A stretch of DNA of 64,000 bases from Saccostrea cucullata (Eukaryota). The first letter of the stretch is position 1; each line of letters starts with the position of its first letter. The stretch spans positions 186,001 through 250,000 of the forward strand of contig NW_026932328.1 of the NCBI RefSeq assembly GCF_032062105.1, read 5' to 3'. This document shows positions 17,927 through 51,872 of the stretch, in pieces. Under the pieces are notes generated by a model. It saw nothing but the letters and a program-made list of their open reading frames with translations, did not search any database and was not told the DNA's origin. Position numbers and translations under genes: made by a program.

Positions 17927-19465
17927 ATGGGCATCCAGTGTTTAATTTGTTGTCTCTTGCTGGTGCTTCCCAGTATCTACGGATTTTGTTTTTCTACGTT
18001 TGGAAGGGTCGATATAACAGGTTTAGTATCTTCTTATTGAACAACACTTAATTTTTTTTTTATTAAATATTCATTTGATTTTGGTGTTTTGTTAACTTTA
18101 ATTTGTATTTTATATTCCTTCAATTTCAGAATCTCAATCAAAATTGTTTATAACTTACAAGTATTTTTATAACTGTTATAAATATATCAAAAAATGATAA
18201 ATCGTGTTCTTTCTTTTTAACACAAATACTCTGAGAGATTATTATTTTTATAACAATATCAATGTTCTTATTAAAACGACAAAATTTCTCAAAGTGAAAT
18301 TTATCATGCTGGTTTCAACGAAATAATTTTTAAAAAAAATGTTTTGTTCCAATTCATTGTGTTCCCTCAAAATGAAATTTTGAATCTGTACCTGCAAGGG
18401 TAGTACTGTTATTATCTTGGTAATTACACGTTAAAAATGCTGGCGATGGATTTCTGTAAAAATAACCATGAATAAAATTTGCAATTTGAAAAGAAATTAC
18501 TCCAAAATACATTTTAAAGCGAAAGTTTTAAGATGAAACATATGGAGATAACGAAAATCAAAAGTTTATAGAACAATACAAAATAGGAGCAGAGCAACAC
18601 TGACGAAGATATAACTTCTTATGTTTTCATAATAGACAATAAATTAATTTGTAAGAGAATATAAAAAAAACAATAACCGTGTTGTTTATTTTCAGCAACT
18701 GGGCGGAGGGTTCCAGTATGTGAATTTAATGGTATTGACTTTCTAGATGGCTCAAAGTTCACGACAACGGGCTGCAACGAGTGCGAATGCAAAAAGGGTC
18801 ATTTACATTGTTGTGGGTAGGTCCGACATTCCGCTCAGAAAACAGTTATTAAACTTTGCATGTTTGTTTTGATAGATAGAAACCATTGGGTTTTTTTTTC
18901 ATTTGGGTAAACTTTTTATTTCAGCATTGGTACAAATGCTGGTGTAATACAACCACCTCCAAACTGCAAAATTTTGAAGGACGGTTGTATAGCGAGAGAG
19001 GTTCGGATATCTGACGAAACACTTGACTGTGTTACCGGAAAACCTTATCGAAACGATACTGGGGAAGTATCATTTCCTACAGGCGCCACGCCTTTACAAG
19101 CAGGTTCTCCCACAACAACTGACCCGATAGGAGGTGTAGCTGTGGGTCATATCCCACATCCAAGCCTCTCCAAATCCACTGTCAATTCTATTCCTAATGA
19201 TGTGGCAACCTTAGAGAATATTTTCAATACTATTGCTAACAATGCCCAAAATGGAAAACGTACTTCTTTTGATGACCTGCTTCGAGACATATCGTCCAGA
19301 AAATCTCTGATGCAATCCAATGTTGTTTATCCCAAGTTTCCAAAATATCCACGGGTTCCATCTACTCAGTACTCAAATTCTTTCCAATTGTTTGATCCAT
19401 ACACCACTAACGACGCCATGTCAAACTGGTTAATGTACAATGGAATCATGGATGGTGGATTCTAG
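17927..19465 (+). CDS. Beta-microseminoprotein (PSP94)-like secreted protein A, 251 aa, with C-terminal extension
   Basis: Exons 17927-18020, 18696-18816, 18925-19465 (intron phases 1, 2; GT-AG). Signal peptide MGIQCLICCLLLVLPSIYG, then 10 Cys in the PSP94 pattern C..C..CxxCxC..CC..C..C..C; TATA-like tatttaaa at 17875. Confidence 0.85.
18539..18605 (-). mobile_element. Naiad-like extreme 3' end fragment in intron
   Basis: atatggagataacgaa...aacaatacaaaataggagca matches 28214-28265 and the reverse complement of 50995-51056. Confidence 0.65.
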
Positions 19466-20344
19466 ATGACATTGATAACACAGAAACATTTGAAGTAGGC
19501 GAGATCGGTTTCTTGTTATCATTTTATAATCATTACTTCAACTGTACAGAAACATACAGGTAGTTGTAGCTCAGCTGGACTGAATATTCTGAGACACTGA
19601 CCAATGAAAACATTTCAACTAGATTGATGTATAGGATTCTGATGACTTGTTACATAGTTAAATTACGTGCTTACAAGTTTGAAATAAAAGTTTACCTCGA
19701 GAAAAATATATTGTTGAATGGTAAGCCTGAAATAAAAGTGTTTCCATATGAAAAAAAACTTACTTTATCGAAAGATCGTTTAAGATGTATTTGCATAGAA
19801 AAATTGAATCTTAATTTATTTGTTTTATATAACGTTTCTATGAATATTATCATTAAAGAGGTTTATATAATTTTATGATTTTAGTAAACATTCATGATTT
19901 TCTAATTCTTTATGTTGGTTCTTCTTTTTCAAATTTAGCTGATTTCATCTTAAGAAAGTTGTTGCACTTGTCTTCAAGCCAAGTCACTTTTACAGTCCCT
20001 TCTGTTGTTTTCTATGGTGCTGTTCTGTTGCAACTCTTCTGATATAATCTGGGTGAATGAATTCTCCTAGATTTTTCCTTACCCAATTGGATAAATATAT
20101 ATATTAACTTTCAATTTCATAGGATGACATACTATTTGATCATGCGAGTCTTGGAAAAATATCATTGTTTTATTCAGCCTAGGTTTTGCCCTTAATTTCT
20201 AAAAGAAACAGTATGTCTGTCTTCTGTATATTTATCTGTAATTATGTTGATAAAAATCAAATAACGATCCGTAGTCATGCTCTGTCCAATGAATCATAAA
20301 AATATTGAAATCAAAGCAAATATCCCTGAATATATCTTATCTCG

Positions 20345-21375
20345 GATTGGATGGCAAGGAGGAATATAAAATATAAAACAGATGAGTCAGACTCCACAGG
20401 ACATTTCGTATCGACATAAGAATGGAAATCACCATTGCTAATTGACAATACATGTACGTCGTCGATATATCTAAATGTCGAGTTGATGGCCAAAGCAAGT
20501 GTTTTATTCTTTTCAAGCATAAGATGTTGCAAAAATTCTGATTTATATTGATACAAAAATATATTTAGGTCTGCTGATAACAGGGCGCAATTGGTACCCA
20601 TGAAAATTACAGTCGATTGTTGGAAGACCTGGTCTCCAAAACAACATAGATATTGTCAATGACAAACTCAAGCATCTTTTGATGTCAAATTCAGAGTTGT
20701 TGTGTGTACAATCAGAATGTTTTTAACAAAATAATTTTGCAAATGACCGTTGACAAGGTAATTAAATTTACGAGTTCCATTTTTATTGAAAAAGCAGCTG
20801 TTAATATCAAAAAGCCTGGACTTTAATCTATCGTGGGGAATGGTTGTTTATAAAGTTGAAAAGTCGTAAGTTTTTAAGCAGTTGATTTTCAAAAAATCTT
20901 GTGATTTCAATTTGTCGAAAAAAATCCTTGAATTTTTTAAGTATCCACATCTGATTAAAACCACCTTTTGAGTATATTGTTGCACAGTACTCTTGACGTT
21001 TCTCCTTCACTTCTGTTAATATTTAAGTAAAGAAAGAGGCTTGATTGAATATTTACTGAAACCCGCAATGTATCTTTGTTTGTAAGGATTCTTATGAAGT
21101 TTCCGAATCCAAAATTTATATGGTAGTTCAAATTTATTTTGGTATTTAGAATATTGAAAACATTCAAAACTGACATATTATTTTGAAGAATTTCTTTCTT
21201 AGAAACTTAGGGAACCATGAGTATACGTTGAATTATTACTTGTAGAATTAAAACCAAGTTCTTCTAAAATACAATTTATGTAATGAGCCTTACAAACGAA
21301 GACAATGTTGTTATCTGCTTTGTCAGCAGGGACCAGTATGTACTGATCATGTAATCTATCTACTTCTTGTAAAAT
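20345..21375 (-). mobile_element. Degenerate Naiad-type Penelope-like RT fragment
   Basis: MGTNCA, NSTFRYIDDV, NQMWILK and PADKADNNIVFVCKAHY in broken frames. Confidence 0.85.
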
Positions 21376-23104
21376 TTTGCTAAATTTATTGTTTGTATGG
21401 ATTTTTATGACATTCTAGACCCCCTATGAATATGGTTATTCGAATTAAGTTTAGTTGTCTAGAACTTTGAAAATATATAATATAAACATATAATTTTAAA
21501 ACGTTATTCTCAAAGTTGGATTACTAGGTGTGGAAGGAAATACTTTTAAAATGCCATTTGTATATGTAATATAGATCCAAGCAAAATTAAATAAACTGAT
21601 GCGTTATGCTTTGTTATCGTCCATTTGGAGAACAAATACAGATCATTTTCAACATATCTTTTTATCCTCTCAGACAACCGTGACGTGTTATTGCTTTCTT
21701 TGTTCTTCTCTATTGGCAGTATTAAGCTTAGGAAGAATTCAAAATACTTCTGAACTTCACATCACCCGTAAAGATGTGTCCTGAGAGACTACAGCTGAAA
21801 TAAAATGAAAATGTCATGAAGGAGGATTTTGCTTCAGATGGTCGTATAGCTAGTAAAGATACCTTCTCATTTTTTGTTGGTATTTTGTCTTTTTTGAAGT
21901 ATTAGTAAAAGATTATTAAACTTTTAATGAAAATTAAACACGTGAACCAAATAAAATTTAGTGGAAATGGGTGTTATTAATTTTTCTTTCCAAATAAACA
22001 ATATATTGATTTAAGTTGAAATTTTATATCCTTTATAATTAATTTTGAATATGCTAATCGAACATAAAGAATGGATTACATAGGGAATATTAGATTATTT
22101 AACAAATATTGATAAAAACAGAGGTTCTTTTTTGTAAGTAGAAAGCTGATATTCCATAAATGTGCAGCCTTACTCATTAATGTAGACACTTTTAATCACA
22201 TCGGACAAGAACGGGTGTACTTGTAGTCTAATGAGGGTAATTTATTTTTAAAAAATCTTGTTTTTATGACAACATTTATAAATGTTAACACTTGCAAAAA
22301 GTAATCTATAAATCAAATGATGAAACAATAAATACAAAAAACGTTTTAAAAAATTATGCCTCAATCTCAATCTCAAGGTTTTTCTTAATATGATTTTCAG
22401 TTAAAGAATTCTTTATAATAATTTTTTTATGTAATTATATAATGTTCATTTTTTTTTTACTTAATTACATTCTTAAAAGTAGGTATTAAGCGGTCCATAA
22501 AAGGATTTATTTTTTACCTTAAAATGCAACAGCAAAAATTTACGAAAAACTATCGATTTTTGACGGTCAGACATCCATTTAATTTTAAAACATGTTTTTG
22601 TTTATTTACGACAAAATCATACATATTTTCATTTGAAGTGCAATTATTAGACATATAGATTATCATCTATAAAGTACAAAATCTACTACATAAGAACATA
22701 AAAATAGTCACATTATAACCTACTATTACGTAACACTGGGAATTAATGTGTAGTTGCCAGTCGTGCATTGTGTCGTCGATCACGACAATTGCTGTCAATC
22801 TACATGTAACAGACAACTTTTACAACCTCTGTAATTGTTTTAATGTATTGAACGAACATTACAGCACTTTGTAACCTTATTCAATCAGATGTTGGAGAAT
22901 ATATAAAATATCTATTGAAAAAAGTATTAACGGACTAAAAAAATCAAAAGAATTGAAGATGTATAACAAAAATGTTATGTTAAGAATCGTGCATGTTGTG
23001 TTTGAGAAGCTGATGAGGGGAGTGCCATATTTTGCCAGAAGGGACATCCTAAGGTGCGTCCATTGTATACCGACCGATGTATGAGGATTCTTCATTCCAG
23101 CAAG

Positions 23105-26100
23105 ATGAGTCAAACAGTAAAGTTCGGATGGATTTGGATTTTAGGTTTTCTGTTTGCAATAGTTGTCTATGTTCAGTGTTCTTGCACTGTAACACCCGCC
23201 AAAATTGAGAAAACATGTGAGTATTATATGATTATCTTAAATTAATGCATTATAAGCGCCTTAGGCATAAGCTATCATTTTGATGGCATCAAAATATTTC
23301 TCTAGAAATAAACTTCTTTGTGTTAACATTTGGTTTTGTTAACTTCGTGTTCCGCTCAAATTTATTATTTGCAGCGTAATTTTTTACAAATGTTAAAAAC
23401 AATGATATATTTCTCATACTGGTTTCAAATTACTTTCAGTATTGAATGTTTTATTTTTGAAATGCAGATACTGGTCGTGTAAGACACTACTGTGTACACA
23501 ATGTCACCAATGGAAATTCCACCGTCCAGATTGACCTCTTGCTGGATTCAAAATTTGAAACACGTGATTGTCAAAGATGCACATGCACTCGCATGGGATT
23601 AAGTTGTTGTGGGTAAGGTATTCAAATATTCAATTAAAGTTGATTTTAATCAACTCTATAGTATTATTTGGGTCATAACTGATCTCAGAATACGGTAATG
23701 AATTGGTGTACGTATAATTTTGGCAGATCTACTTATTAATAATATACATAAGTATCCTTTTACCACCAGCCACGCCGGAGCCCATTCTATCAAATGTAGT
23801 ACTAACAAACATAAATAATAAATGTAAATAATTTATTTCCGTTAGCAAAATACATCTAAAATATGCAGGACTATTGCAAAGCCTTTTACGGTGTTAGAGT
23901 TTTTTTTCCAAATAAATGGAATACTACAGTATCCATCCTATGTTCTTAGAATTAAGAATATGTATGAAATCAATTCGAAAGACAAACGATGACTTACTTA
24001 ATTTACATAAAATAGTGTCAAAAAATTTCTTTGTTCCTATATTTTTTTAAAAATATCTTTTAAATGAAACCTCTTGAATTAATTTTTAAAATGATTTCTG
24101 CTTGTAGTTTGCGTAATCAGAAGTTTCGATTCCCGTTTCCTGCGCCGCATCAGAACAGAAATATAAAATGTTTTTCGCTAAGCGCAACATTAGACGTGAA
24201 AGTCACGGGTCATTAAGAGCTTAAAAAAAATCAATGCCACGTTTATTGTAGGTTAGTAAAATAAAGATCCCTGGAGTGCTGAACATACATCTAAATCTAA
24301 ATTTGATTCCCGTCACTGGTACATGGCGACGTCTCTGTATGGAAAGGGACGAACAATTGTAACAACATACTATCAATTTACTTATGTTTCAAATGGGTAC
24401 TGTTCTGGTTTACTGCTTTCTGAAATTCAAGAAATCTAGCTATATTTTCGAGATGTCATAAAAGTTTCTTTTATGTTATTTTACACAAGTGAACAATTAT
24501 GTGTACCGAACTGGAAGGGTTAAGCATACCTTCTTTTTACTTTCATGCATATTCAAATATAAAGCAAGGTGACAAACCAAATTGCGAGCATCATATATCA
24601 ACATGTAAAAGCAAAAATTACTATATATCGTATATTTTTTTTATTATGCATGTGTATCAAACAATTTCGAAATTAACAGAGACACGAGTACAAAATAAAA
24701 ATCACATTAAAATTTGTAAGAATCCAGGGTTTTTCATTAATAATAATGAGGATAATACACTGATTAATTTTTCTGGAATTAAAAAATGAATTTTTCAACT
24801 GTTGAAATGTATTTTAATGTTTTGAGGATGCAAAAATTTTATTATAATGACAAAAACATATTATACATATACGTTAAATTGGTACGCTTCTTTCTTTGGT
24901 GAGGACTAGAATATATGTGTATCGAATTTGAACTACCTTTTTTGTCGTATTTTTAAAACCATGCACATACATATATATTACTTTTTTAAATCACAATTTT
25001 TGTATGAAATGCATTTTGGTTTACTAAAAAAATCCTTTCTAGTTCAAAATAGGTATTTTAAGACTTTGCGAGTGCACATTGAACAACATAATAAATTTAA
25101 TGTTTTTGTGCAGACAGTATGACATTTATATTGAAGATTAATATTGTCCGAGCTCTTCACCCCAGGGTCTACTTATCAATTTCGGACAAGACTTTAATCA
25201 GGCCACCTGACAATTGACAAGGACGTGCAGAGGGCACACGGTGACCTGTCATCGCTGCATACTTCTACCATCACCTGGCCCCGCAGACATACTAAATATA
25301 CTTAATAAACGCTTTATTATTTTTTATTATTTAATTTGAAATTATACATCCAAAATTAACATTGGCCGTATTTGATCCTGTTTAAAAATATCGAATACTT
25401 TCCATGTGCATTATTATGCAATTTACACAACATTATGAAATACATTTGCTATTCGGAGAAAAAAAAATCGCTAAACATATTAAATATCAAGTATATTATG
25501 GCTAAGAATATAACATATTTCTCTGATTCACATTAATAAATTAGAGGTACTGTAATTGAATGAATCAATCAGTGATTTAGATAAGAGGATTTTTAAAGGG
25601 TGGTAAAATTTTTTTTAAATAAAATCTCTTTCAGGTATGGAGTAGCTTCTAACGAACCTATCCACGTACCAGAAGGCTGTCATCCAGTGGAAGACGGATG
25701 CCGGATTGCCTTGATTTCCAACATTGATAATGTAACGGACTGTTACAGTATCGGACCACCGGCTGCCGAGCGCCGCCAACAGGAAATGATGAGAGATATG
25801 GCAAGGAGTATGGCGCACCAACAATACCCACAGGCAATGCAGTACTGGAGGGGACTCAATCCACCCCGAATTCACCCGATGGCGGCACTTTTTGGAGCAG
25901 GAAGGCGAGGACCAAACGGTCGTCCGGTAGAACAGCCTGAGGGCCTGATGGAGTCCTTCCTGTTGATGAGTATGTTTGGCGGTGGTGGAATGGGCGGAAG
26001 TGGTGGGCCGGGTTCACAGGGCACTGCTTCCCCTGGGGATCCTATTGGACATATGGGAGACGGAGGGCAAAGTATGGGCGGACTGGGATTGGGATTAGGT

Positions 26101-26169
26101 GGGATGGGTGGATCTTTTATGGAATCCCCATTAGGAATGAGTCTTCTATTTTCGTCTTTCATGAGTTAG
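23105..26169 (+). CDS. Beta-microseminoprotein (PSP94)-like secreted protein B, 263 aa, with Met/Gly-rich tail
   Basis: Exons 23105-23216, 23468-23612, 25635-26169 (phases 1, 2). Hydrophobic signal peptide, SCTVTP, DCQRCTCTRMGLSCCG, PEGC..DGC..DNVTDC; 10 mature Cys. Confidence 0.87.
24110..24365 (+). mobile_element. Degenerate tRNA-derived SINE (Meta-SINE-like)
   Basis: B-box-like ttcgattccc followed by a gtgaaagtcacgggtc...taaagatccct core resembling mollusc SINE cores (recognised from memory). Confidence 0.45.
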
Positions 26170-26669
26170 AGAAGTGATATTTATTTCCTCAGTCGATCTG
26201 CATTTTGTTTCAATTCTGCTGTTGCCATATTGTTGTTGTAACCGAGATTTTCGCAAACTTTCTTAGGCTTATTCTTTTTAATCTGAAGTCTTTAACAATA
26301 TTTCAAATCAGTGAGATTGTCAAAATCAGAACTGAAAATTGGTTACATATTTTCTATGACATCAATATGTTTGTTCATGGTAAAATATTAAATATTAATT
26401 TAAAAAATAATACTAAATCTTGTTATAACATTTATTTGCATAGAGAACAAGCTTGTCGGGTTCGGCTTTGATATTTATTTTGTTTTGTGTTGCCTTTTAT
26501 TTATTGCACTATTAATAAAAGAAATATTCCTTATATTGCTTTACTTTTTCCACTTCATAAACATTATATTCATAGTACAGAAGCCTCTCTTGTACACATA
26601 ATATTTCACAGATCTATTTCTATCCCCAGTTTGTTTCACATTAAAGATATATCTTTCTGAAGATAAATG

Positions 26670-27631: not shown

Positions 27632-27654
27632 TAGAGTGCATAAATGTTGCAATC

Positions 27655-30479: not shown

Positions 30480-31720
30480 TAATCTCTAGTTTTCAAGTTA
30501 CGAAAATAAACCTTGTCCAAAAATTTTCCCTTTCTAACATAAAAATATTTAAAATACAGAGGGCGAACCTTTTCTAATAACTGCGTTTTAAGGTCCGCCC
30601 TCTCTATTTTTCTAGTTTTCAAGCTACGAAAATAAACCCTGTCCAAACATTTCCCCTTATGACATGAAAATATCTGAAATACAGAGGGCGGACCTTTTCT
30701 GATAACTGCGTTTTAAGGTCCGCCCTGTCTCTTTCCCTAGTTTTTTAAGCTACGAAAATAAACCCTGTCCAAAAATTTCCCTTCATAACATAAAAATATC
30801 TGAAATACAGAGGGCGGACCTTTTCTGATAACTGCGTTTTAAGGCCCGCCCTTCTATTTTTCTAGTTTTCAAGCTACGAAAATAAACCCTGTCCAAAAAT
30901 TTCTCTTTATGACATGAATATATCTGAAATACAGAGGGCGGACCTTTTCTGATAACTGCGTTTTAAGGTCCGCCCTGTCTCTTTCTCTCGTTTTTTAAGC
31001 TACGAAAATAAACCCTGTCCAAAAATATCACTTTATGACATGAAGATATATAAAATACAGAGGGCGGACCTTTTCTGATAACTGCGTTTTAAGGTCCGCT
31101 CTGTCTATTTTTCTAGTTTTCAAGCTACGAAAATAAACCCTGTCCAAACATTTCTCTTTATGACATGAATATATCTGAAAAACAGAGGGCGGACCTTTTC
31201 TGATAACTGCGTTTTAAGGTCCGCCCTCTCTATTTTTCTAGTTTTCAAGCTACGAAAATAAACCCTGTCCAAACATTTCTCTTTATGACATGAATATATC
31301 TGAAAAACAGAGGGCGGACCTTTTCTGGTAACTGCGTTTTAAGGTCCGCCCTGTCTCTTTCTCTATTTTTTAAGCTACAAAAATAAACCCTGTCCAAAAA
31401 AAATCCTTTTAATATGACATAAAGATATATGAAATACAGAGGGCGGACCTTTTCTGATAACTGCGTTTTAAGGTCCGCCCTGTCTATTTTTTTTTAGTTT
31501 TCAAGCTACGAAAATAAACCCTGTCCAAAAATTTCTCTTTATGACATGAATATATCTGAAATACAGAGGACGGACCTTTTCTGATAACTGCGTTTTAAGG
31601 TCCGCCCTGTCTATTTTTCTTTTTTTAGTTTTCAAGCTACGAAAATAAACCCTGTCCAAAAATTTCACTTTATGACATGAATTCGAAGATATATGAAATA
31701 CAGAGGGCGGACCTTTTATT
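30480..31720. repeat. ~125-bp tandem satellite array, ~10 units
   Basis: acagagggcg-type anchors at 30556, 30681, 30807, 30931, 31057, 31182, 31307, 31436, 31563, 31700; each unit contains the hairpin gagggcggacctt...aaggtccgccct. Confidence 0.97.
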
Positions 31721-31837
31721 ATACTACGTTTAAAAATTTTAAAGTCATATATAAGGCGTTTTTTTTATAAGTTCAGACTAAAAAATATAAAAAAGATCTT
31801 TCTATTTGTTTTGGTACTTTATATACCACTGTAAAGA

Positions 31838-32459: not shown

Positions 32460-33960
32460 CTTCAGTGGTTTTCTAGTTATTTGTGTAAAAGGTCAAAAAA
32501 AGTTATGTATAAAGATCTGTTATCATCAAAACTAGATATTTTTGCAGGTGTACCCCAAGGTTCCGTTTTAGGACCCCTTTTATTTCTGATATATGTAAAT
32601 GATGTTGCTGTAAATATGTTATCATTGTGCAGACTTTTTGCTGATGACAATTCGCTTCAACACTCTTCATATAACATACTTAATATTGAATATAACTTAA
32701 ATCATGATTTACATATTCTGGAACTTTGGTCAAATCAGTGGCTTTTAAAATTCAACCCTTCTAAAACGAAAGTAATTTTTTTCAATAAGAAAAACATTTC
32801 TGTTATGCCTAAATTATTTTTTAAAGGTGACAGACTGGAGTGTGTCCCTGTTCATCGTCATTTAGGTCTATTGTTATCACAAAACCTTAGCTGGACTGAA
32901 TACATTGATAGCATTGTAAACAATGCTTATAAGAAACTTGGGCTTTTGAAAAAACTTAAGTATAAAATCGGCAGGACACACCTTTCAAAATTGTATGTCA
33001 CATTTATCAGACCCTCGCTCGAATACGCTTCAATTGTTTGGGATGGATGCTCTAATAATGATGCCGAAAAGCTTGAAAGAGTTCAATTATCTGCAGCTAG
33101 AATTGTTACAGGTCTTCCAATTTTTGTGTCAAGAGAAACGCTTTACTTTGAAACTGGCTGGGAAACATTGAAAGTTAGGCGCTATAATGCAAAAATGACC
33201 ACGATGTACAAAATTCATAATGGTAGTGTACCTGAATATTTAAATGACATTGTTCCAAACAAGCGTGAAAACATTTCAAAATATAATACCCGTAATAAGG
33301 AACAATACGTTGTCCCAAGATGCAGATTAGAATTATATAAAAGGTCTTTTATTCCCGACGCTGTGAAACAGTGGAATTTACTAAAGACAGAAACGAGGGA
33401 ATCTATCTCACTTAATGCAAAAACTTAACTACAGAAGTAAAAAAAACCCAATTCATTTTTCATTTGGCAAACGCTATACAAATATAATCCATACTAAACT
33501 TAGACACAACTGTATACTTAACTATGATTTACATAAAAGAAATATTATTAATAGCCCTTTATGTTCATGTGGAAAGTATGAAGATGTTTATCATTTCTTT
33601 TTTGCCTGCAGAAATTATCCAAACGCTAGGAATAATCTTTTCAATCGCCTGTTTTTACTTGACGAATTGGTCAATATTGATACAAATTTGTTATTATTTG
33701 GTAAGTAAATTTGCCTGTAGAAACAAATACATATATTTTTGCTGCTGTGCATAAATTTATTGACGAATCTTGTAGATTTTAAATTGTTATATTACTGAAC
33801 AAATATTTCACTTATCTCTTTTGCATTTGAATTTCTATGTACTACATGTACATGTATTTTAATTGCATGACATATAGTTATATTTAAGGAGAGGAACTCG
33901 TAAGTTGAAAGAACTTGTTTCCAACCCTTTTGTTTATACAATAAAATATGTTCAAAACAT
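32460..33960 (+). mobile_element. 5'-truncated CR1/L2-group LINE (RT C-terminal half)
   Basis: GVPQGSVLGPLLFLIYVND, LFADD, FNPSKTK, HLG, RPSLEY; frameshift near 33420; CSCG..H.FFAC motif; aataaa near 33940. Confidence 0.9.
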
Positions 33961-36774: not shown

Positions 36775-37405
36775 TGAAGCAGAATTTGTGCAAAATCTTA
36801 TGCGTGAAAAGAAGAAAACACTTGCTGTGGCTTTCAACTCGACATTTAGATATATCGACAACGTATTGTCAATTACCAATGGTCACTTCCATTCCTACGT
36901 CGATACGATATATCCTAGTGAGCTTGAGATAAAAGATACCACAAAGTCTGACACATATGTTTCATACTTGGATATTTTACTTGAAAAAGATGGTAATCTA
37001 ACAACCAAACTATATGATAAACGTGATGACTTTAACTTTTCTGTCGTCAACTTCCCTTACTTATGCAGCAATATACCTTCATCACCTGCATACGGAGTGT
37101 ATATGTCTTAGTTGATTCGATACACAAGAGCATGCTCTACATATAAACAATTTCTAAAACGAGGCAAATTATTGACAAGCAAGTTGATGAAACAAGAATA
37201 TCAATAGTCTCGTTTAAAGTCATCATTTCGTAAATTTTATGGTCGATACAATGATCTTGTCACTGAATTGACGACGACGACGGATTTTTCAGTTATTTTC
37301 ATATCAAGACAGGGAGCACACGGCGGGTGTGATCGGTCAGCAGGGAATGCTCACTCCTCCATTGCACCTGATCCCACCTCTGATGTTTCGGAGGTCCGTG
37401 TTTTA
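36775..37405 (+). mobile_element. 5'-truncated Naiad-type Penelope-like element
   Basis: FNSTFRYIDNVL, KLYDKRDDFNF, SNIPSSPAYGVY followed by the conserved 3' module. Confidence 0.9.
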
Positions 37406-40792: not shown

Positions 40793-42254
40793 ATGTTGAG
40801 AGCCAATAAAACCAGGGCATCGAAGGCCAAAAGCCCATATGCCCGCCCAGTATCTAGGACTTCTGCGGCGCATAGTATTATTAGTTACATAGTCTTTTAG
40901 TGACAGGGTATGGGATGATACCTGGTTAGTAAATTTCATACCTGGCGAGGCGGAGCCGAGTCAGGTATGAAATTTACTAACCAGGTATCATCCCATACCC
41001 TGTCACTAAAAGACTATGTAACGAATTTACCCCATCGATGAAACATTTAATACGTTTTATCTGTTGTTTACAAATGGTTTTCTCTGCTAAATGCTTCATC
41101 AGGCTTATACTGTGCCTATTATGACGTCACGTTTGTGTTTGTGACGTAATACATCGACCGGGTATAGATTTACAACTGACCGGGTATAAGTAATCCACCG
41201 CCTTCACGTGACAGACTTCAACCAATCGCAAGCCAGGATTTCACGGAAAAATCGACAGAGGTGGGGTAATGTAGCCTCCAGGGTGACCACCCAAGCATCC
41301 ACGGTAGCGTCGACGTCCATTGACCCCATCATACCGACATCAGTCAACAGTCATTATTCCCAGGCAGCTATGTCAGTGCCAACAAGAACTTACATGGTCA
41401 GCCAAGAATCGCTTGTTCAATCAGTACCCTTACAGCCTGTCTACGAGACTGCAGACATCCTAACTCCGGTTGTGCAGACTGTACCCACCCAACAGACAGT
41501 GGAGCCGCAGCTGCCTGTGCCAACAACTAGCACTACAGCAGGTATAAATTGCATGGTTGAAATAGATAGGCCTACACCTTTTCAGAGTGTAGCATCAATG
41601 CTTGGAGCTCATGTCTCTCAAACATTGAAAGAAAAAATTTGGAATAACGAGTATGTCGCTTTGAGCAAACTGTTGATCAAAGAGCCAGTTTCAGATATAC
41701 AGCATCATATTGTTTATCTTGATGGTTTAATTCAGGTTAAACCTAAGTACAAAGATGAAAAAATTATGTCTATTTCACAATGGACTGATGCCTTTTTAAT
41801 TTTTGCCTCAATTTACTGCGCCAAGCACTCTGCACAAGCTATAAATTTATTTCGTTATATGGCAACAATTAGAAAAGGTGCAGAGCGTTCACCTACGTCT
41901 TATGGTTGGAGGGATTATGACATCCAGTTTAGGCTGAAAAAATCATTTGATTCAAATCTTAACTGGGGTTCGGTTGATGCTGAACTTTGGTTGTTTTATA
42001 TGCAGCCCACTGTACAAAATTCTAGTCAGAATCCCCCCAAACAATTTAAATGTTACTCTTACAATTTTCAGGGTGTTTGCGAAAAACACAATTGCAAGTT
42101 TTTGCATATTTGTGTGAAATGTAATGGTTCACATCCTTCTTTACATTGCAGATCTTCCCAGAATAACAATGTCAAACAATTCCCCCAGTCTAGGCCCACA
42201 CAACAGCAGTTCCGCCCAAGATTCCCACAGCGAGCAATTCGACCTACACAATAA
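40793..42254 (+). pseudogene. Gag-like ORF interrupted by a 391-bp insertion
   Basis: ATG at 40793 (MLRANKTRASKAKSPYARP...) rejoins in frame at 41268; KIWNNEYV, WTDAF, WRDYD.QFR and C-x7-C-x4-C-x3-H-x-C-x2-C-x3-H-x4-C zinc fingers. Confidence 0.82.
40877..41267. mobile_element. Long-hairpin non-autonomous element (probably Crypton-like) inserted in gag
   Basis: Perfect 61-bp arms at 40884-40944 and 40962-41022; removing the element restores the gag frame. Confidence 0.7.
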
Positions 42255-43862
42255 GTTATGGGATTTAGGCCATTCTCCAATTAAAACCAACAATCTTCAC
42301 AAATTATTAATAAATTATCCTGACAGAAAAGTTGCCAACATATTAGGGCAGGGTTTTGAGAAAGGGTTTTTGTTAAATTATCAGGGCCCTAGAGTAAGGG
42401 TTGAATATAAAAATATGAAGTCTGCAATTCAACACTCTAGCGATCTAGAAGAAAAGATTAAGAAGGAAATTGGATTAGGTAGGGTTTTGGGTCCTTTTTC
42501 AGCCCCCCCCCCCCAATATCAAATTTAAGATGTAGCCTAATAGGTTTATTACCTAAAAAACAAGGTGGATGGCGTATGATAACCAATCTTTCACATCCTT
42601 ATGGTGATAGTGTTAACGATTACATAGATCAGCAAGATTGTACTGTCAGCTATGCTTCGTTTGATGATGCAATTAACATAATTCAAACCAAAGGAAAAGG
42701 GGCCCTTATGGCAAAGATGGATATTTCTAGTGCATTTAGGCTTTTACCAATCAATCCTCAGGAATTTTGTCTGCTAGGTTTTAAGTTTAATAATGCATAT
42801 TATATTGACAAGTGTTTGCCAATGGGGTGTTTAGTATCTTGTTCACTGTTCGAAAAATTTTCATCATTTTTACATTGGGAATTAGAACAGAGGTCACAAA
42901 AGGATGGTATTGTTCATTACTTAGATGATTTTTTTTTGCTGGATCAGCGAATTCTAGTGAATGCAGAGAATTAATGTATCATTTTCAAGAACTGAGTCAA
43001 TTTTTAGGAGTTCCAATTACACCAGAAAAAACTCAAGGTCCTTGTACAAAATTAACATTTTTAGGGTTAGGAATAGATTCTGTTGAAGAGACAATTTTTG
43101 TTCCAAAAGAGAAAGTAGATGAATTGTTGGAAAAGATAAAGTATGTTCAGTGTAGTAAAAAAGTAACAAAGAAAGAATTAGAATCGCTTGTTGGTTCACT
43201 TGCCTTTGTTGTAAAAGCACTACCGGCTGGTAGGGCATTTTGTAGGAGAATTTACGGGGCACTACAAGGTGTTGATAAATCTTTTCATTTGATTAGAATA
43301 TCTAATGAGATTAAGTTGGACCTTCAAATGTGAGTTGTATTTCTGCAAAAGTTTTAATGGACTAACTCGGTTTCCATCAGTAGATTGGTCAGATAGTGAT
43401 ATGTTGCAATTTTCTACAGACAGTTCAGGGTCGGTTGGGTGTGGTGTTGTTTTTGGCGATGAATGGAGTGTGTTAGTTTGGCCAGCAAGTTGGTCTCAGG
43501 AGATAAAGAAGGATATTACTTTGTTGGAGCTCATTCCAATATTGTTAGGTATTGTTATTTGGGCAGAAAAACTAGCTTCTAATAAATTGCTATTACATGT
43601 AGACAATTTAGCACTTGTTCACATAATTAACAACAAAACGTCAATAAATAAGAGAGTTATGGTTTTGCTGAGAGCCTTGGTCCTCAAAACATTGCAGAAT
43701 AATATTCAGATCAAATGTCAACATATTCAAGGTATAAAGAATGATAAGGCAGATGCTCTCTCTCGTTTTCAGTTTTCGAGGTTCCATCAGCTGGCTCCTG
43801 GGGCTCGGCCTTATCCCTGTCCAGTTCCTATGCAATTTTGGCAAATTATTCATCAACTGTAG
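42255..43862 (+). pseudogene. RT/RNase H of the Ngaro element (three frameshifts)
   Basis: ITNLSHP, KMDISSAFR, LPMG, YLDDF, TFLG; RNase H TDSSG, ELIPI, VDN, ADALSR; frameshifts at the C-run ~42510, the T-run ~42935 and ~43330. Confidence 0.92.
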
Positions 43863-44701
43863 AGAACCTGGTAGATGCTAGCATTTCGGACAATACAAAC
43901 AAAGTTTATAGGCAGGCATTCAAACCTTTATTTAACTCTTTTCCACAATTGTGGCCTCCACCTGTTGACCATGTCATCAATTTTGTTGCACACATGTCAG
44001 AGAAAAAATGCGCCTTTTCAACTGTCAAGTGTTATCTGTCTGGTCTGAGCTTTTTTATAAACATTCATGGATGGCCAAATTCTGTGGAGTCATTTTTAAT
44101 TAAAAAACTGCTTACTGGTTACAAAAAGTTGACTGTGTCTAGTGATATTAGAAGGCCTATTACCTTGCACTTATTAGGTCGTATCATAAATACCTTGCCG
44201 TATGTTGCACATTCTTTATACGAGGCAACATTATTTCAATGTGCCTATTCAGTAGCATTTTTTGCATTGCTTAGAGTCAGTGAAGTAATAGACCTTCAAT
44301 CTGATAGTGTTCAGTTATTACAAGACCATGTTAGTCTACTGATTAAAAGTTCTAAGACTGATCAAATGCACAGGGGTTCAGCAGTTAAAGTTCCAAAGCA
44401 TGCCCAGTCATTAATTTTGTTTACAATACTGCAGAAATTTCCTGCAATGCGTCAGACAATTTCAACTACAAAATTTTTTGTGCATTTCAACTCCAAGCCT
44501 TTGACTCAGTATCAGTTTTCTACAATACTCAATAAATGTTTATCATTTTTGAATATAAACACATCGGTTTTTAAATCTCATTCTTTTAGAATTGGTGGGG
44601 CCACACATCTGTATTTAAATGGTATGAGCGAAGCTGAAATCAAAACCATTGGCAGATGGAGTTCTGCTGCCTACAAGTCATATATAAGGCCAATTGTTTA
44701 A
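43838..44701 (+). CDS. Tyrosine recombinase
   Basis: LLRVSE, SKTDQ, SHSFRIGGAT, GRWSS and YKSYIR give the catalytic R-K-H-R-W-Y set. Confidence 0.92.
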   Translation: MANYSSTVENLVDASISDNTNKVYRQAFKPLFNSFPQLWPPPVDHVINFVAHMSEKKCAFSTVKCYLSGLSFFINIHGWPNSVESFLIKKLLTGYKKLTVSSDIRRPITLHLLGRIINTLPYVAHSLYEATLFQCAYSVAFFALLRVSEVIDLQSDSVQLLQDHVSLLIKSSKTDQMHRGSAVKVPKHAQSLILFTILQKFPAMRQTISTTKFFVHFNSKPLTQYQFSTILNKCLSFLNINTSVFKSHSFRIGGATHLYLNGMSEAEIKTIGRWSSAAYKSYIRPIV

Positions 44702-44741
44702 TAAGTTAGATGCAAATTTATTTTGTTCAAAATCGTTTCAG

Positions 44742-45346
44742 ATTGCATATGGATCATTGGTTCATCTTTGATATTTTGGGCTCAGAAATATGCTCAACAG
44801 AGAATGCTTAACAACCTGGGATTTGAATCACATAGGATAATTTGGCATGGAATAAGGGGTATGGTTTGGTCACAGCTTTATCCAACTATCCAAAAGAAAT
44901 TAAAAGATAATAACCCACCAACAATCCTAGTAATACACTGTGGTGGCAATGATATTGGTAATCCGCATAATACGTTGAAGGGTTTACAAATGTACATGAA
45001 ATCTACCATTGTAAATATTTCACAATTAATGCCAAAGACAGTTATTGTTTGGTCTCATATTTTACCACGAAGTAATTGGACCTTATGTCTTTCTAACAAT
45101 GATGGAGAAAATTGGAGAAGAAGAATCAATTCTGCACTTGCTACTTTTGTTGTTAAGAAAATGTGTGGGGCCTCCATTAAATATCCTGATATTTTAAAAA
45201 GACATGTAGCCCTTTTTCGCAAAGATGGTGTACACTTGTCAGACTTGGGTAATGACTTGTTCGTGAATTCTTTAAGAAATGCTCTGGGGGTGTTTTTGTC
45301 AACCACTGACAGATTTTATCCTACTACTCCCACATGTACTTGTTAA
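44742..45346 (+). CDS. SGNH/GDSL hydrolase domain (no ATG start; begins at a predicted splice acceptor)
   Basis: Blocks IIGSSL, GIRG, HCGGNDI and DGVHL. Confidence 0.85.
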
Positions 45347-46069: not shown

Positions 46070-48175
46070 TAAACAATCATTAATTTTAAACTTCAATATG
46101 CCAATAAAGGAACTGACGCGATTAATATAAGTAATATTCTTAACCACAAAAGAATATATGTACAGTCTTGCGTTCCACCATATTCAACTTGAAGACTACA
46201 CCTTGTATTTCCTACAATTATACATCGACTATTGCTTCCAAACTTTTTTTAATTACAGTAAAACTTTACATGGCCTGGATATCGAATATCTGAACCTCAG
46301 TCCTCCATTGCGTTCATATTCTTCTTTACACTACAACTACAGTCCTGCTGGACACGGTATTACTGGTGACGTAAATAAAATTAATAATGAGGACCTTAGA
46401 TCACTAATTTTTAAAGGTCCTGAATATAGGTAGCCCCGATCCTTCAACAGACGTCGGAATTTCGGGAATAGAATATTACGCCAGGTGATGGACAAGACAT
46501 GAAAAAGAAGACTTTGACACTTTGTCAGAATGGATTATTAAATGCATCAGCTGTATGTTAAAATCGCGCGTTAAGCTATTAAGGGGCATTATGAAAACTA
46601 TCTATCCTCCTGTTTTCAATAACCCAGAAGTAAAAAAAGGAATAATTATTAGAAAGATTACACGATTAGTATGTACTGGTCCCTGTTGACACAGCAGGTA
46701 ACAATGTTGTCTTCGTTTGTAAAGCTCATTTTAGAGAAACATGGATTTAATTCTATAGGTGTAAATCCTACTTAAACCAATAGCTCCCTTTCTAAGGAAG
46801 AAATTATTCACAACCAAATGTCAGTTTTGAATATTTTTAATATTCCAAACAACCAAAATGAATTTAAATTACCATATCTATGCTGGATTCCGAAGCTTCA
46901 TAGAAATCCTTACAAAGATACATACATGTAGCAGGTTCCTAGAAATGTTCTACCAAGCCTCTTTCTTTACTCCTCACCAAAAGTCCAAAACATTAACAGT
47001 AGTGAAGGAGAAACTTCAGGAGTTATATGCAATAATATATTTGAGAAGCGGTGTAAATAAGATCTGGATATTAAAAATTCCAAGGGACGTTTGGAAAATT
47101 GAAGTCACAAAATTGTGCAAAATTCAACAGCATTAAAACTTACGACTTTTCAACTTATATGCAACCATTTCTTCGCGATTAATAAAGTTTAGGCTTTTTC
47201 ATATCATTGACAGCTTTAAAAAGAATGGAATTAGTAAATTTACTTACAGTGTCTTTGGTCATTTGCAAATTTATTTTGTTAAAGGAGATTCTGATTGTTT
47301 ACACAAGTTCTCTGAAGTTGATAATAAAAAGATGCTTGAGTTTCTGATTGACGGTATCTTTGTAGTTTTAATTGGAGACCAGGTTTTCCAACAGTCAATT
47401 GGAATTCCCATGGATACCAATTTCGCCCATTATTAGCAGACCTATTTTTGCATTTAAATGAAACATAATTTTTCCAAAATCTTATAGGTGAAAAGAGGAA
47501 AACAGTTGCTGCGGCCTTCAACTCAATATTTAGATACTTAGTATATCGACGACGTATTGTCAATTAACACTTATGTCGATACGATATATCCAGTTGAGCT
47601 TGAAATAAAAAAAATTCCACAGAGTCTGACACATCTGTTTCATTTTTACATGTATATAACTTGAAAAGGGCATTAACGATGATCTAACAACTTAGCTTTA
47701 TAACAAAGGAGATGACAAAAACTTTTCAGTTGGCAACTTCCCTAATTTTTTGCAGCAATATACCTTCATCGGGGTCTGTAGCTTTAAATTGATTCGATGT
47801 GCAAGAGCATGCTTTACGTTTAAACACTTTTTAAAATGAGGTAGATTATCAACAAACAGGTTGCTGAAACAAGAATATCAGCAGTCATCATTTCGCAAGT
47901 TCTATGGTCGATACATTCATTGCATTGTCAGCAAATACAATTTATCATTAAGTCAAATGCTGACTGACGTTTTTCATACTTGTTAGGCCATTATTTACAC
48001 TGTCTTGTCGACGGATTTTTCCGTTATTTCACAGACATGATAAGGAGCACAAGGCGGAATGTGTCCTTAATGGCACCTGATCCCCCTCTGGTTTTTTGGA
48101 TGTCCCTGCTTCTATTTTGTATGGTGTAATAAACTTTTGAGCTTGAATACTGTTCTTTATATCCATAAATTTCAT
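46070..48175 (+). mobile_element. Longest Naiad-type Penelope-like copy (degenerate)
   Basis: YANKG, the linker P.GH.ITGD..I.NEDLRSLI.KGP.YR, a decayed CxC (cgt-tca-tat), NNVVFVCK, RT motifs and the 3' module; no C-terminal GIY-YIG. Confidence 0.85.
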
Positions 48176-49056
48176 TCTTAAACTTGCTTTATTTACAAAG
48201 CGAAATCTTTCAGTTAGATGTAAATTGCTTAAAATCTATTTTACTTACAATTCTATGTCATGATTTTCTGTACATTTTTTTTTCAAGGATTGTTGTATTT
48301 GTAATATATTGAATAGTAACTGTCCCTTATGGGGTATGACAGAAGATACCCTATCTTCGTCACTTTTTGTCTATACAATTAGCCAAATTATCATGTCTTA
48401 TAACTCTTGGTTTATTCTGGTCACAATATTGTGTGTATAACTTTTAATATTCTATTTTTAGGGTTGTGGCATTTTAGAAACCCTTTTGGAAGAATTGTAT
48501 TGTGTTTTTGTTTGCTGATGTTATTAACCATTCCAATTTCTTAGCTATTTGATGTGTTTATTGTGTCAAACTGAGTCCAACCCCAGCATGCAGTTATTCA
48601 TGTATATTTGTATATTTATTTTAAGGAAGACAAAGTGAAATATATAAGATAATATGTTATGTATGTTGAAATGTTTCATCGATTCGGTCACTAGTATCAC
48701 GAAACTTTTGTACAAATTAATTATTTTATGCAACAACATTATTTTATAACATAAATCGGGCATAGTTCAAAGTAAATAGCTTGGCTTTCATCTCTGAATT
48801 TCGTATACTAGCTTGAGATATGCACGATGAATGCATGCAGACTGTATTCATTGCCCTATTAACACAAAGGGTCGAGATGCGTGAAGAAATTGTCATCTGG
48901 CCGTATAAGTTGAGATTTACGCAGGTGAAAATCACCCTATGAAAAATGATGGCACAAGTAGCCAGCTCATAATTTCAGGTGCGAGGATCGCCACACAAAC
49001 TTTTTCACCGCAGCAGGGCCCTGTGCTTTTTCTGTTGTCTTACTCTCTACAGAAGA

Positions 49057-51872
49057 ATGCACGCTTTGCCGATATATCTGCTTTTGCTTTCGATCGTGCA
49101 TTCGTGTCTCGGAGCCTGTACAGTCACACCCATTCAAAATGAGCCCTTAGGTAAGAAAATTTTATTGAATAGAACGTTATTGAACAGTAAGAATTACATT
49201 TTGGAGGGGGTACTGGATGTACATTTGCAGTAGCATAACTTATATTACATCAAATGATAACTCATTTGAACATACTGAAATATATTTTGTTGGTTTTAAA
49301 ATAAAAAATTAAGGCTTTTTGAAGATTTAATCGTATATTCTGATGTTGTTTGGAGCAATCTGTAGAAATAAATTAGGCTATTTAGTATAATATGTATAAT
49401 TTGACGAAATATTACTTTGAGGTGAGATGAAAATTGTTTATAATTTTTAGCTTGTGGGATATAATCATCTGATATATGGATACGTCTTTTCGCCGTTGTC
49501 CGGAGACATACCTGTACATACAGGTGTGTTAAGATCTGACAACCTATAAGTAGTCTGTGGTGCATCATGATTTTTTTTAATGAACTGCAGTTGCATGTTT
49601 TGATTTATTTCCTGGTTTCAATCATATAAATAAAAGATTTTTTTTAATAAAAAAAATCAAAATATTTGTTTGTAGAAAAATTGATTTATCACATTCTAGC
49701 TACATTTCTGATGTAGAAGTTTCTTTGTGTACTTTTTACATGTATTACACTAAATAATGTCGAAGACTGTTTTAATGTACAGTGTACTAAAGTTCATGAC
49801 CTCGAAAACCTGCCCAGTATTTAGGCCACAAGATATTCTAGATGTATCGCTCAGTTTTTTAAGGTATCGAAAGCTCTCTGTCATACGGGGAAATAAAAAG
49901 TTATTTCCGATTGCGGACCTCTATGAAAAATTATTATGTAAACGTCAATGCTAATCATAATGTACGCATGTAAGATGTTCATATAGCTAAAGTACGTAAA
50001 TAACCTCATATTATTCATTAAAGGTTTAAAACGTAAACAAAAAATCGAAAAAGAAAATTGAATCATTTTCCTTTTTTACAGCAATGAAGTCATTTCGATA
50101 TTTCTGTGAATATATCCACAACGACAAAATCAAAGGACCGACAAAAATAAAGTATGGACAAGGTTCCGTATTTGAGGATGTGGATTCCTGTCAGAGGTGT
50201 CGATGTAGTCAGCGAGGATTGGATTGCTGCGAGTAAGTAACATGCGTATCAGAGTAACCCCCTCCAAATAAAGACTGAGTGTTCACAGGAAGCCGCACTT
50301 TATATCGCCCTTTTGAGTGGGGAACTAGGTATATATCCTTATTGTGGCAGGGGATTGGGTTAAGATATATGGACGACGTATTGTCAATTAACAATGGTCA
50401 TTTCCATTCCTACGTCGATACGATATACCTGGTGAGCTTGAGATAAAATATACCACAGAGTCTGACACATTTGTTTCATACTTGAATATTTTACTTGAAG
50501 AAGACGTTAATGGTAATCTAACAACCAAGCTATATGATAAACGTGATGACTTTAACTTTTCTATCGTGAACTCCCGTTTTTTATGCAGCAATATACCTTC
50601 ATCACCTGCAAACGGAGTGTATATATCTCAGTTAATTCGATACGCAAGAGTATGCTCTACGTATGAACAATTTCTAAAACGAGGTAAAATATTGACATGC
50701 AACTTTAGGAAACAAGAATATAAGCAGTCTCATTTAAAGTCATCATTTCGTAAGTTCTATGGTCTATACAATGACCTTGTCAGCAAATACATTTTATCAT
50801 TGAGTCAAATGCTGACTGACGTTTTTCATACGAATTTTTGGTCCATTATTTATACACTGAAATGACGACTGATTTTTCCGTTATTTCCCGATCATGACAA
50901 GGAGCACACGGCGGATGTGACCGGTCAGCAGGGGATGCTCACTCCTCCATGGCACCTGATCCCACCTCTGATGTTTCGGAGGTCCACGTTTGCTGTGCTC
51001 CTATTTTGTATTGTTTTATGGACTTTGACATTGAATACTGTTCGTTATCTCCATATCACCCTTTTGAGCAGACCAGTCGTTTTGTAGATCAGTGACTACA
51101 CAGCCAAAACTCAGAATATGTATTTAGAATGACATTGAAAACAACGAAAATACTGTCATTTAAGAGATAAAAAGCAGATAATTATATCAAACTTAAAGAA
51201 AAAGAGAAAAGGAGGTCGGATTAAGTTTTAACATCGTTTGTTACATAATTATTACCATTCTCTAAGCAAAACTTTAAAGATTGACTATTTCAGAATGTTT
51301 TTTCTTACAGGACTGGATTGAAAGTAAAAATAGCACCAAGGTCAATTCCCGTAGAATGTCACATAGTTAAAGAAGGGTGTGATCAATATTTAGTGTACAA
51401 AGGCGACAACATCACAGATTGTGCTACTGGTAGACCTGCTAAAATAGTACGCCAAGAACAAATTGCGCAAGACAAACGAAGTCAATATATCGAAGATATG
51501 CTCTACAAAGAAGTAATGCAAGATATGGATGGAACATCCGGAGCCAATAGAGAAGTCGAAGGAAATTTCAAGCAATGGGTTCTTTTAGACTACTTTCTGA
51601 ATGACGCATTTGTTGGCCGAATTCCATCTCCCATTGTGGATCAACAGAAGACTCCAGCAGAACTCTCCGGGTCTTCACCAATGAAAGCAAACACAGCTGA
51701 TTCAACTATCGGCTCGCTTACAAAAGGTTTTGTTGACAGTCTTGGAGGCCCGGATGCTGCGCGCGCAACCATAATGGAGAGAATTAAAAACTATGACATT
51801 GGTAGTCCACATAACCAGGGACTGAATGACAACCTTCCACTTCTTTACCTTCTATCAACTTTGATAAATTAG
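49057..51872 (+). CDS. Beta-microseminoprotein (PSP94)-like secreted protein C, 268 aa, with C-terminal extension
   Basis: Exons 49057-49150, 50082-50232, 51311-51872 (phases 1, 2). Signal peptide MHALPIYLLLLSIVHSCLG, ACTVTP, SCQRCRCSQRGLDCC, PVEC..EGC..DNITDC. An acceptor at 49052 suggests an upstream non-coding exon. Confidence 0.87.
50364..51056 (+). mobile_element. 5'-truncated Naiad-type element in intron 2 of PSP94-like gene C
   Basis: YMDDVLSI, KLYDKRDDFNF, GVYISQLIRYAR and the best-preserved 3' module. Confidence 0.9.

What the first reader, a model, noticed from the sequence alone, without database searches (positions are those of the whole stretch)
17927..51872. Cluster of three PSP94/beta-microseminoprotein-like genes with long, length-matched but unalignable tails
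Seen: three co-oriented genes, none recovered whole by the ORF track, share exon number, intron phases (1, then 2 in the codon right after the CC pair), a signal peptide and a 10-Cys PSP94 pattern. After the last Cys each continues for 144, 141 and 149 Cys-free residues that I cannot align with one another. Established: vertebrate MSMB ends a few residues after the last Cys; family members bind CAP/CRISP proteins, and a squid member is an egg-capsule pheromone. Inference: this is a diverged head-plus-disordered-tail subfamily, possibly extracellular matrix, cement, shell or mucus components or tethered chemical cues. It is the best candidate for an undescribed host system here.
Basis: partly seen in the sequence, partly recalled or inferred. 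Interest (0 to 1): 0.82.

Follow-up and report, generated by a model that had tools for sequence, protein, structure and literature searches.

The report
Oyster relatives of shell protein PfN44
These three real oyster genes make secreted proteins with a small beta-microseminoprotein head and a floppy tail; the first is the counterpart of a known pearl-oyster shell protein (PfN44), so they are most likely shell-matrix components rather than an unknown system.

Summary
In detail: three co-oriented 3-exon genes (phases 1, 2), signal-like N-termini, 10 mature Cys, and tails of 144/141/149 aa that do not align with each other. The window is from the rock oyster Saccostrea cucullata (RefSeq LOC134234876, -878, -856, all 'uncharacterized'). 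The head is a beta-microseminoprotein fold: Pfam PSP94 is sub-threshold, but a family profile and Foldseek both rank beta-MSPs first. Gene A is a syntenic co-orthologue of PfN44, a characterised pearl-oyster shell-matrix protein, and the order LRP-like, A, B, C is kept in Pinctada and three other oysters. Tailed members occur in scallop, ark shell, mussel and clams. The length match holds in oysters only (Pinctada tails: about 84, 334, 121, 263 aa). Best reading: secreted shell-matrix proteins with a rigid docking head and a flexible tail carrying 'sticker' helices (0.55). No expression data were available for these genes, and gene A lacks PfN44's acidity. I found no paper linking PfN44 to the beta-MSP fold, which is a modest novelty.

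The parts
17927..18020 (+). Gene A (LOC134234876; PfN44 co-orthologue) exon 1: signal-like peptide (about 19 aa, inferred) plus Cys1; phase-1 donor
18696..18816 (+). Gene A exon 2: N-terminal beta-MSP domain, 6 Cys ending in CC; 62% identical to PfN44
18925..19465 (+). Gene A exon 3: last 3 Cys plus tail and stop
19031..19462 (+). Gene A tail, 144 aa, Ser/Thr/Pro/Asn-rich, net charge 0, pI 6.9
19421..19462 (+). Gene A C-terminal hydrophobic block; a similar block ends PfN44 and other A-type proteins
23105..23216 (+). Gene B (LOC134234878) exon 1: signal-like peptide plus Cys1 (RefSeq start at 23081)
23468..23612 (+). Gene B exon 2: 6 Cys; Pfam PSP94 18.6 bits (cut-off 22)
25635..26169 (+). Gene B exon 3: last 3 Cys plus tail and stop
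25744..26166 (+). Gene B tail, 141 aa, 22% Gly and 11% Met; the orthologue model has a helix right after the head and a terminal helix
25945..25977 (+). Gene B internal Leu/Met/Phe block, kept in Pinctada and scallop B-type tails
26125..26166 (+). Gene B C-terminal hydrophobic block
49057..49150 (+). Gene C (LOC134234856) exon 1: signal-like peptide plus Cys1
50082..50232 (+). Gene C exon 2: 6 Cys ending in CC
51311..51872 (+). Gene C exon 3: last 3 Cys plus tail and stop
51423..51869 (+). Gene C tail, 149 aa, mildly acidic (pI 4.9)
51567..51599 (+). Gene C internal hydrophobic block, the most conserved part of the C tail
51828..51869 (+). Gene C C-terminal hydrophobic block

Best explanation
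An old tandem cluster of secreted shell-matrix proteins of the PfN44 kind, already present before oysters and pearl oysters split. Shown: intact genes, a 10-Cys beta-MSP-fold head, long tails under purifying selection that end in a short hydrophobic block, and orthology of gene A to PfN44 by sequence, tree and synteny. Inferred mechanism: the mantle secretes the proteins into the shell-forming space. The disulfide-locked head docks on a conserved protein partner in the organic matrix. The tail is a flexible spacer whose short Leu/Met/Phe helices act as stickers, joining the protein to other copies or to the hydrophobic framework. So anchored, the proteins limit or steer calcium-carbonate growth, as reported for PfN44. 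The three tails (neutral Ser/Thr/Pro in A, Gly/Met in B, mildly acidic in C) give three material properties on one docking module.
For: The head profile finds PfN44 at E=3.9e-20. Exon-wise identity of gene A to PfN44 is 48%, 62%, and 38% over 84 aa. In Pinctada the order is LRP-like, A-type, PfN44, B-type, C-type, matching S. echinata, M. gigas and C. virginica. The tree pairs each oyster gene with the Pinctada gene in the same slot. PfN44 is cited as a matrix protein acting in nacre and in larval shell formation, with an RNAi study (PMC4445274, PMC6095885, PMC5824888, PMC5519542). All tailed hits that could be named are from shelled molluscs, and the two cephalopod members have no tail. Tail dN/dS is about 0.08-0.36. 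A terminal hydrophobic excess is seen across 22 tails. The B model has a confident head, a low-confidence tail and a terminal helix.
Against: There is no tissue, stage or proteome evidence for any oyster gene; ID searches found nothing. Gene A's tail is neutral (pI 6.9) and shares only its two ends with PfN44's acidic 334-aa tail (pI 4.2), so magnesium binding cannot be assumed. Pinctada has two A-type genes, so A is a co-orthologue and not one-to-one. PfN44 is not named among the proteins detected in a 72-protein P. fucata shell proteome (only part of the supplement is held). Nothing is known of B or C orthologues. The sticker and docking steps are pure inference. The PfN44 paper could not be read.
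Confidence: 0.55

Rival explanations
1. Components of a non-mineralised secretion (hinge ligament, periostracum or pallial mucus), especially gene B, whose Gly/Met tail resembles abductin-type ligament proteins in composition.
For: The B tail has 22% Gly and 11% Met, also seen in Pinctada and scallop B-types. That ligament proteins are Gly/Met-rich is from my own knowledge and was not tested. Foldseek also lists vWC and mucin modules, though weakly.
Against: The resemblance is compositional only. A and C lack this composition. The only characterised member is a shell-mineral protein.
Confidence: 0.17
2. Protective or immune scavengers on body surfaces: the head binds CAP/CRISP-type or other proteins as vertebrate MSMB and snake SSP-2 do, and the tail tethers it.
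For: The fold matches SSP-2 from a toxin/antitoxin complex. A very conserved head implies a fixed partner.
Against: In vertebrate MSMB the last strand (beta10) forms the dimer edge with beta1 (PMC3268785). The models show no strand after the last Cys; in B a helix follows. No binding was tested.
Confidence: 0.1
3. Larval cement or foot adhesive proteins.
For: Secreted, low-complexity tails with sticker-like blocks. Oysters cement.
Against: The subfamily is shared with non-cementing pearl oyster, scallop, ark shell and clams. The tails are not Tyr- or Lys-rich.
Confidence: 0.07
4. Egg-coat proteins or tethered pheromones like squid beta-MSP.
For: Squid beta-MSP (D2X5V5) is in the same profile hit list. 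Squid and marsupial members are egg-coat components (PMC3268785).
Against: The squid protein is tailless and distant in the tree. Gene A exon 2 is 95-100% identical across Saccostrea, Magallana and Crassostrea while synonymous sites are saturated in the cross-genus pairs. That is the opposite of the rapid change reported for MSMB and USM.
Confidence: 0.06
5. B and C are GPI-anchored surface proteins and their terminal hydrophobic block is an anchor signal.
For: B and C end in about 12 uncharged, mostly hydrophobic residues.
Against: The block is short. The equivalent block in A, PfN44 and the Pinctada C-type carries charged residues, and similar blocks recur inside tails. No GPI predictor was available.
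Confidence: 0.05

Closest known systems
PfN44, acidic shell-matrix protein of Pinctada fucata (AGG35567.1 / M1T9E3; Pan et al. 2014, doi 10.1074/jbc.M113.504027, not readable here)
   Same: Same 10-Cys head (62% identity over exon 2 of gene A), same exon boundaries, same genomic slot after an LRP-like gene and before B- and C-type genes, long Cys-free tail, similar terminal hydrophobic block.
   Different: PfN44's tail is 334 aa, acidic (pI 4.2) and internally repeated. Gene A's is 144 aa and neutral, and the middles do not align. Pinctada has a second A-type gene. B and C are more distant paralogues (33-35% head identity to A).
Beta-microseminoprotein / PSP94 family (Pfam PF05825; vertebrate MSMB, MSMP, USM, snake SSPs)
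   Same: Ten Cys in the family pattern, all-beta fold (Foldseek top hit chicken MSMB3, E=4e-5, TM 0.64), three coding exons as in MSMP, tandem clustering.
   Different: Below the Pfam gathering score. A 141-149 aa tail follows the last Cys, with no terminal strand predicted. The head evolves slowly, not fast.
Squid beta-MSP egg-capsule pheromone (D2X5V5, Doryteuthis pealeii)
   Same: Same molluscan branch of the family; found by the head profile at E=2e-6.
   Different: Tailless, about 34% identical to the A head, and a separate clade.
Gly/Met-rich bivalve matrix proteins (abductin, MRNP34)
   Same: Gly/Met composition of tail B (recalled from memory; a lead only).
   Different: No sequence comparison was run, and to my knowledge they have no beta-MSP head.

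Membership tests
Beta-MSP/PSP94 | Ten conserved Cys in the mature protein, including C-x-x-C-x-C and a CC pair | tested here: met
   1+6+3 Cys in all three genes; all ten invariant in the orthologue alignment
Beta-MSP/PSP94 | Pfam PF05825 at or above the gathering score (22 bits) | tested here: not met
   Best 18.6 bits on B exon 2 and on full-length B orthologues; no match for A or C exons. 23 of 60 relatives match at E<=0.01, so the model is weak for molluscs
Beta-MSP/PSP94 | Profile-level sequence homology to solved beta-MSPs | tested here: met
   The 60-sequence head profile hits only beta-MSP-family chains in the PDB, E 3e-9 to 4e-7
Beta-MSP/PSP94 | Two-domain all-beta fold | tested here: met
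   AlphaFold2 on the S. echinata A head: pLDDT 92.8, nine strands. Foldseek ranks 1-3 are MSMB3, SSP-2 and PSP94. Done on an orthologue, not on a joined window model
Beta-MSP/PSP94 | Secreted (signal peptide) | tested here: inconclusive
   Hydrophobic N-terminal cores (Kyte-Doolittle 10-residue maxima 2.5-3.5) just before Cys1; no signal-peptide predictor was available
Beta-MSP/PSP94 | Terminal strand (beta10) after the last Cys, protein ending a few residues later | tested here: not met
   Tails of 141-149 aa; no strand predicted after the last Cys, and a helix follows in B
Beta-MSP/PSP94 | Disulfide connectivity; binding to CAP/CRISP proteins | not testable with these tools
   Needs biochemistry
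PfN44-type shell-matrix protein | Orthology of the head (gene A) | tested here: met
   62% identity on exon 2; oyster A is sister to the PfN44 + Pinctada A' pair, support 90/78, moderate
PfN44-type shell-matrix protein | Conserved genomic position | tested here: met
   LRP-like, A, B, C in Pinctada and three other oysters
PfN44-type shell-matrix protein | Acidic, repeat-containing tail | tested here: not met
   A tail pI 6.9 with 8% D+E, against pI 4.2 for PfN44; only the ends align
PfN44-type shell-matrix protein | Mantle expression, presence in shell, Mg/Ca binding, RNAi shell phenotype | not testable with these tools
   No expression resource; literature ID searches were blank

The most novel reading that the evidence does not exclude
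A bivalve-wide, unrecognised class of shell-matrix proteins was co-opted from the beta-microseminoprotein family. The head is a conserved docking module for a specific matrix partner. The freely exchangeable tails carry short hydrophobic sticker helices that drive self-assembly or phase separation of the matrix, and PfN44 is only its first studied member.
Probability: 0.25. Interest if true: 0.65.

Novelty: new variant of a known kind. Interest (0 to 1): 0.4.

Why it matters
It ties an orphan-looking shell protein (PfN44) to a known fold and gene family. It also shows that PfN44 is one of a conserved cluster of three to four genes shared by oysters and pearl oysters, with tailed relatives in scallops, mussels, ark shells and clams. 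That gives shell biologists a defined candidate set (A, B, C) and a domain-level test of which part, head or tail, does the work. I found no paper pairing 'microseminoprotein' with 'shell matrix'. However, the library is incomplete, the PfN44 paper could not be read, and UniProt already auto-names one tailed scallop member 'Beta-microseminoprotein'. It is not a new kind of system.

Tried and rejected
Artefact or pseudogene: rejected. There are no stops or frameshifts, RefSeq agrees exon by exon, spliced transcripts of the M. gigas B orthologue exist, and selection is purifying. A further copy in the window: none. Hidden homology between paralogous tails: none significant by pairwise shuffle or profile-profile comparison; only a weak B-C resemblance in layout (helix, then hydrophobic block). 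vWC/SVWC as the head's family: weaker than beta-MSP in the family-level sequence and structure searches, although VWF/VWC slightly outscore PSP94 on the A head alone, all sub-threshold. DBLMSP2 hits vanished with the deeper profile. Tail-length match as a conserved constraint: not supported outside oysters. A post hoc count gave 0.7% of triples within 8 aa among 23 hand-listed tail lengths, so it is left unexplained. Linking the sequencing runs to tissues failed. Orthologue IDs were not found in main texts or held supplements. The PfN44 paper is not held.
Full report
Observation. Reading the sequence and translating exon by exon gives three + strand genes, each with three coding exons and GT-AG introns in phase 1 and then phase 2 directly after the CC pair. 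Gene A: 17927-18020, 18696-18816, 18925-19465 (251 aa). Gene B: 23105-23216, 23468-23612, 25635-26169 (263 aa). Gene C: 49057-49150, 50082-50232, 51311-51872 (268 aa). Each has a hydrophobic N-terminus, 1+6+3 mature cysteines, and a Cys-free tail of 144, 141 or 149 aa. The tails do not align with each other (shuffle p 0.11-0.26; profile-profile E >= 0.11). A profile scan of all six frames finds no fourth copy.

How the searches were done. The step of joining the exons into a spliced protein and searching or folding it was left out. Profiles, trees and structure predictions used proteins of other species, or of another S. cucullata locus (LOC134233846), returned by the tools. The RefSeq products of these three genes were read only to check that each exon translation occurs in them, and one of them (P0013) was looked up by its id for accession numbers. 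The two N stretches (13778-13927, 14531-14661) lie outside the genes and were left alone. No human contig was met; human PSP94 appears only as PDB rows in hit tables.

Source and gene reality. Exon 3 of gene C is 100% identical to a Saccostrea cucullata RefSeq protein, and all nine exon translations are exact substrings of LOC134234876 (A), LOC134234878 (B, which starts eight codons earlier at 23081) and LOC134234856 (C), all named 'uncharacterized'. Orthologues exist in S. echinata, Magallana gigas and M. angulata, Crassostrea virginica and Ostrea edulis, with the same splice phases. Seven assembled sequencing-run contigs encode the M. gigas B protein without introns and map to its three exons, so the junctions are used in transcripts of that orthologue.

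The head. Pfam PSP94 matches only B exon 2, at 18.6 bits against a cut-off of 22, and full-length orthologues do no better, so the formal Pfam test fails. A profile of six orthologue heads ranks beta-microseminoprotein first in the PDB, and a 60-sequence profile hits only that family (E 3e-9 to 4e-7). AlphaFold2 on the S. echinata A head gives a confident all-beta model (pLDDT 92.8), whose best Foldseek matches are chicken MSMB3, snake SSP-2 and PSP94. The squid pheromone D2X5V5 is in the same hit list. Ten cysteines and a three-coding-exon form are family features described in PMC3268785. The head is therefore a divergent beta-MSP domain. Neither model shows a strand after the last cysteine, and in B a helix follows. 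In MSMB that last strand forms the dimer edge, so dimerisation or CAP binding cannot be assumed.

The family is wider than this window and has a studied member. The head profile found 88 cluster representatives. About twenty carry long tails, from pearl oyster, scallops, ark shell, mussels, Manila clam and a freshwater mussel. One is PfN44 of Pinctada fucata (E=3.9e-20). Gene A matches it in all three exons (48%, 62%, and 38% over 84 aa). In the Pinctada genome the order is LRP-like gene, an A-type gene, PfN44, a B-type gene and a C-type gene. This is the order seen in S. echinata, M. gigas and C. virginica, and the window has EGF/sushi exons upstream. The tree, whose supports are rough, puts oyster A with PfN44 and its neighbour (90/78), oyster B with the Pinctada B-slot gene (94/61) and oyster C with the C-slot gene (98/89). 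The cluster thus predates the oyster/pearl-oyster split, and gene A is a co-orthologue of PfN44. The PfN44 paper is not held. Its title states that PfN44 stabilises magnesium calcite to inhibit aragonite. Other papers cite it as acting in nacre (PMC6095885), as needed for larval shell formation (PMC4445274) and as studied by RNAi (PMC5824888). It is not named among the proteins detected in one P. fucata shell proteome.

The tails. They are unalignable between paralogues but 44-87% identical between oyster orthologues, with dN/dS of about 0.08-0.36 where dS can be estimated. They are therefore constrained, not random read-through. Heads are more constrained still: A exon 2 is 95-100% identical across genera. 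The length match is local: C. virginica A has 163 aa, and Pinctada has about 84, 334, 121 and 263 aa. What the tails share is a short Leu/Met/Phe-rich block at the very end. In 21 of 22 tails the last 14 residues are 43-71% hydrophobic against 15-32% elsewhere. The combined p of 5e-12 is inflated because the sequences are related, and single tails are mostly not significant. Similar blocks recur inside B, C and PfN44 tails and are their best-kept parts. The model of M. gigas B has a confident head, one helix after it, a long low-confidence stretch and a terminal helix; the tail alignment is shallow, so low confidence is weak evidence of disorder. Gene A's tail is neutral (pI 6.9) whereas PfN44's is acidic (pI 4.2), and only their ends resemble each other.

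Mechanism. The most likely reading (0.55) is that these are mantle-secreted shell-matrix proteins. The disulfide-locked head binds a conserved matrix partner, the tail is a flexible spacer whose hydrophobic helices stick it to other copies or to the organic framework, and the anchored protein limits or steers carbonate growth. Shown: gene structure, fold, orthology, synteny, constraint and the terminal block. Inferred: tissue, docking, sticker role and mineral effect. The inference is best for A, weaker for B and C, and PfN44's magnesium chemistry may not carry over. Rivals: ligament, periostracum or mucus component (0.17), CAP-binding protective protein (0.10), larval cement (0.07), egg-coat pheromone (0.06), GPI-anchored surface protein (0.05).

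Novelty and verdict. What appears unreported in the searchable library is that PfN44 has a beta-MSP head and sits in a conserved cluster of tailed paralogues with a shared terminal motif. That library lacks many papers, and UniProt already labels one tailed scallop member as beta-microseminoprotein.

Noticed in passing
window 41208-45346 (+): Tyrosine-recombinase (DIRS/Ngaro-like) retrotransposon between genes B and C: gag-like ORF, RT, integrase-family recombinase and a GDSL/SGNH-like ORF. It helps explain why the B-C gap is 23 kb here but under 2 kb in M. gigas, C. virginica and S. echinata.
   Followed up: partly
window 4589-7988 (-): LINE-like element in pieces (ORF1-like, endonuclease, zf-RVT) among the exons of the upstream gene.
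   Followed up: partly
window 2765-2908, 9138-9362, 10307-10618 (+): EGF- and sushi-like exons of the upstream LRP-like gene, the conserved neighbour of the cluster in oysters and Pinctada.
   Followed up: partly
window 30485-31731: Tandem array of a 125-bp unit, about 10 copies, 88% matches.
   Followed up: no
window 20311-20601, 32481-33708, 36788-37111, 50482-50865: Reverse-transcriptase-like fragments by eye; one lies in intron 2 of gene C and gave no Pfam hit.
   Followed up: partly
window 53151-53777 (-): Cys-rich ORF with six ephrin-receptor-like (PF07699) repeats, probably an exon of the downstream gene.
   Followed up: partly
window 56544-58525 (-): DDE_Tnp_4 (PIF/Harbinger-type) transposase ORF with an adjacent THAP-like ORF (THAP by eye).
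   Followed up: partly
window 61548-61979 (-): ORF with a signal-like start and a PAN/apple-like Cys pattern by eye; no Pfam hit.
   Followed up: partly
L005 10001-28154 (Pinctada, KAK3088352.1): The 571-aa public gene model appears to fuse two genes: an A-type gene with its own stop and a tail of about 84 aa, and PfN44. A lone exon-2 fragment lies at 21734-21916.
   Followed up: partly
L018 10001-13312: A fourth tailed S. cucullata paralogue (LOC134233846, B-type, 107-aa tail) on another contig, between a kinase and a HlyIII-family gene.
   Followed up: partly
L003 6823-7419 (C. virginica gene A): The tail is 163 aa because a short Leu/Met helix-like segment is internally duplicated.
   Followed up: no
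P0014 (S. echinata gene C model): The 240-aa model lacks the signal-like exon 1 seen in other oysters; probably a modelling error.
   Followed up: no
P0102, P0103, P0104, P0116: A separate tailed clade that includes Ruditapes ends in an aromatic Pro-Trp-Phe-type block instead of a Leu/Met one.
   Followed up: no
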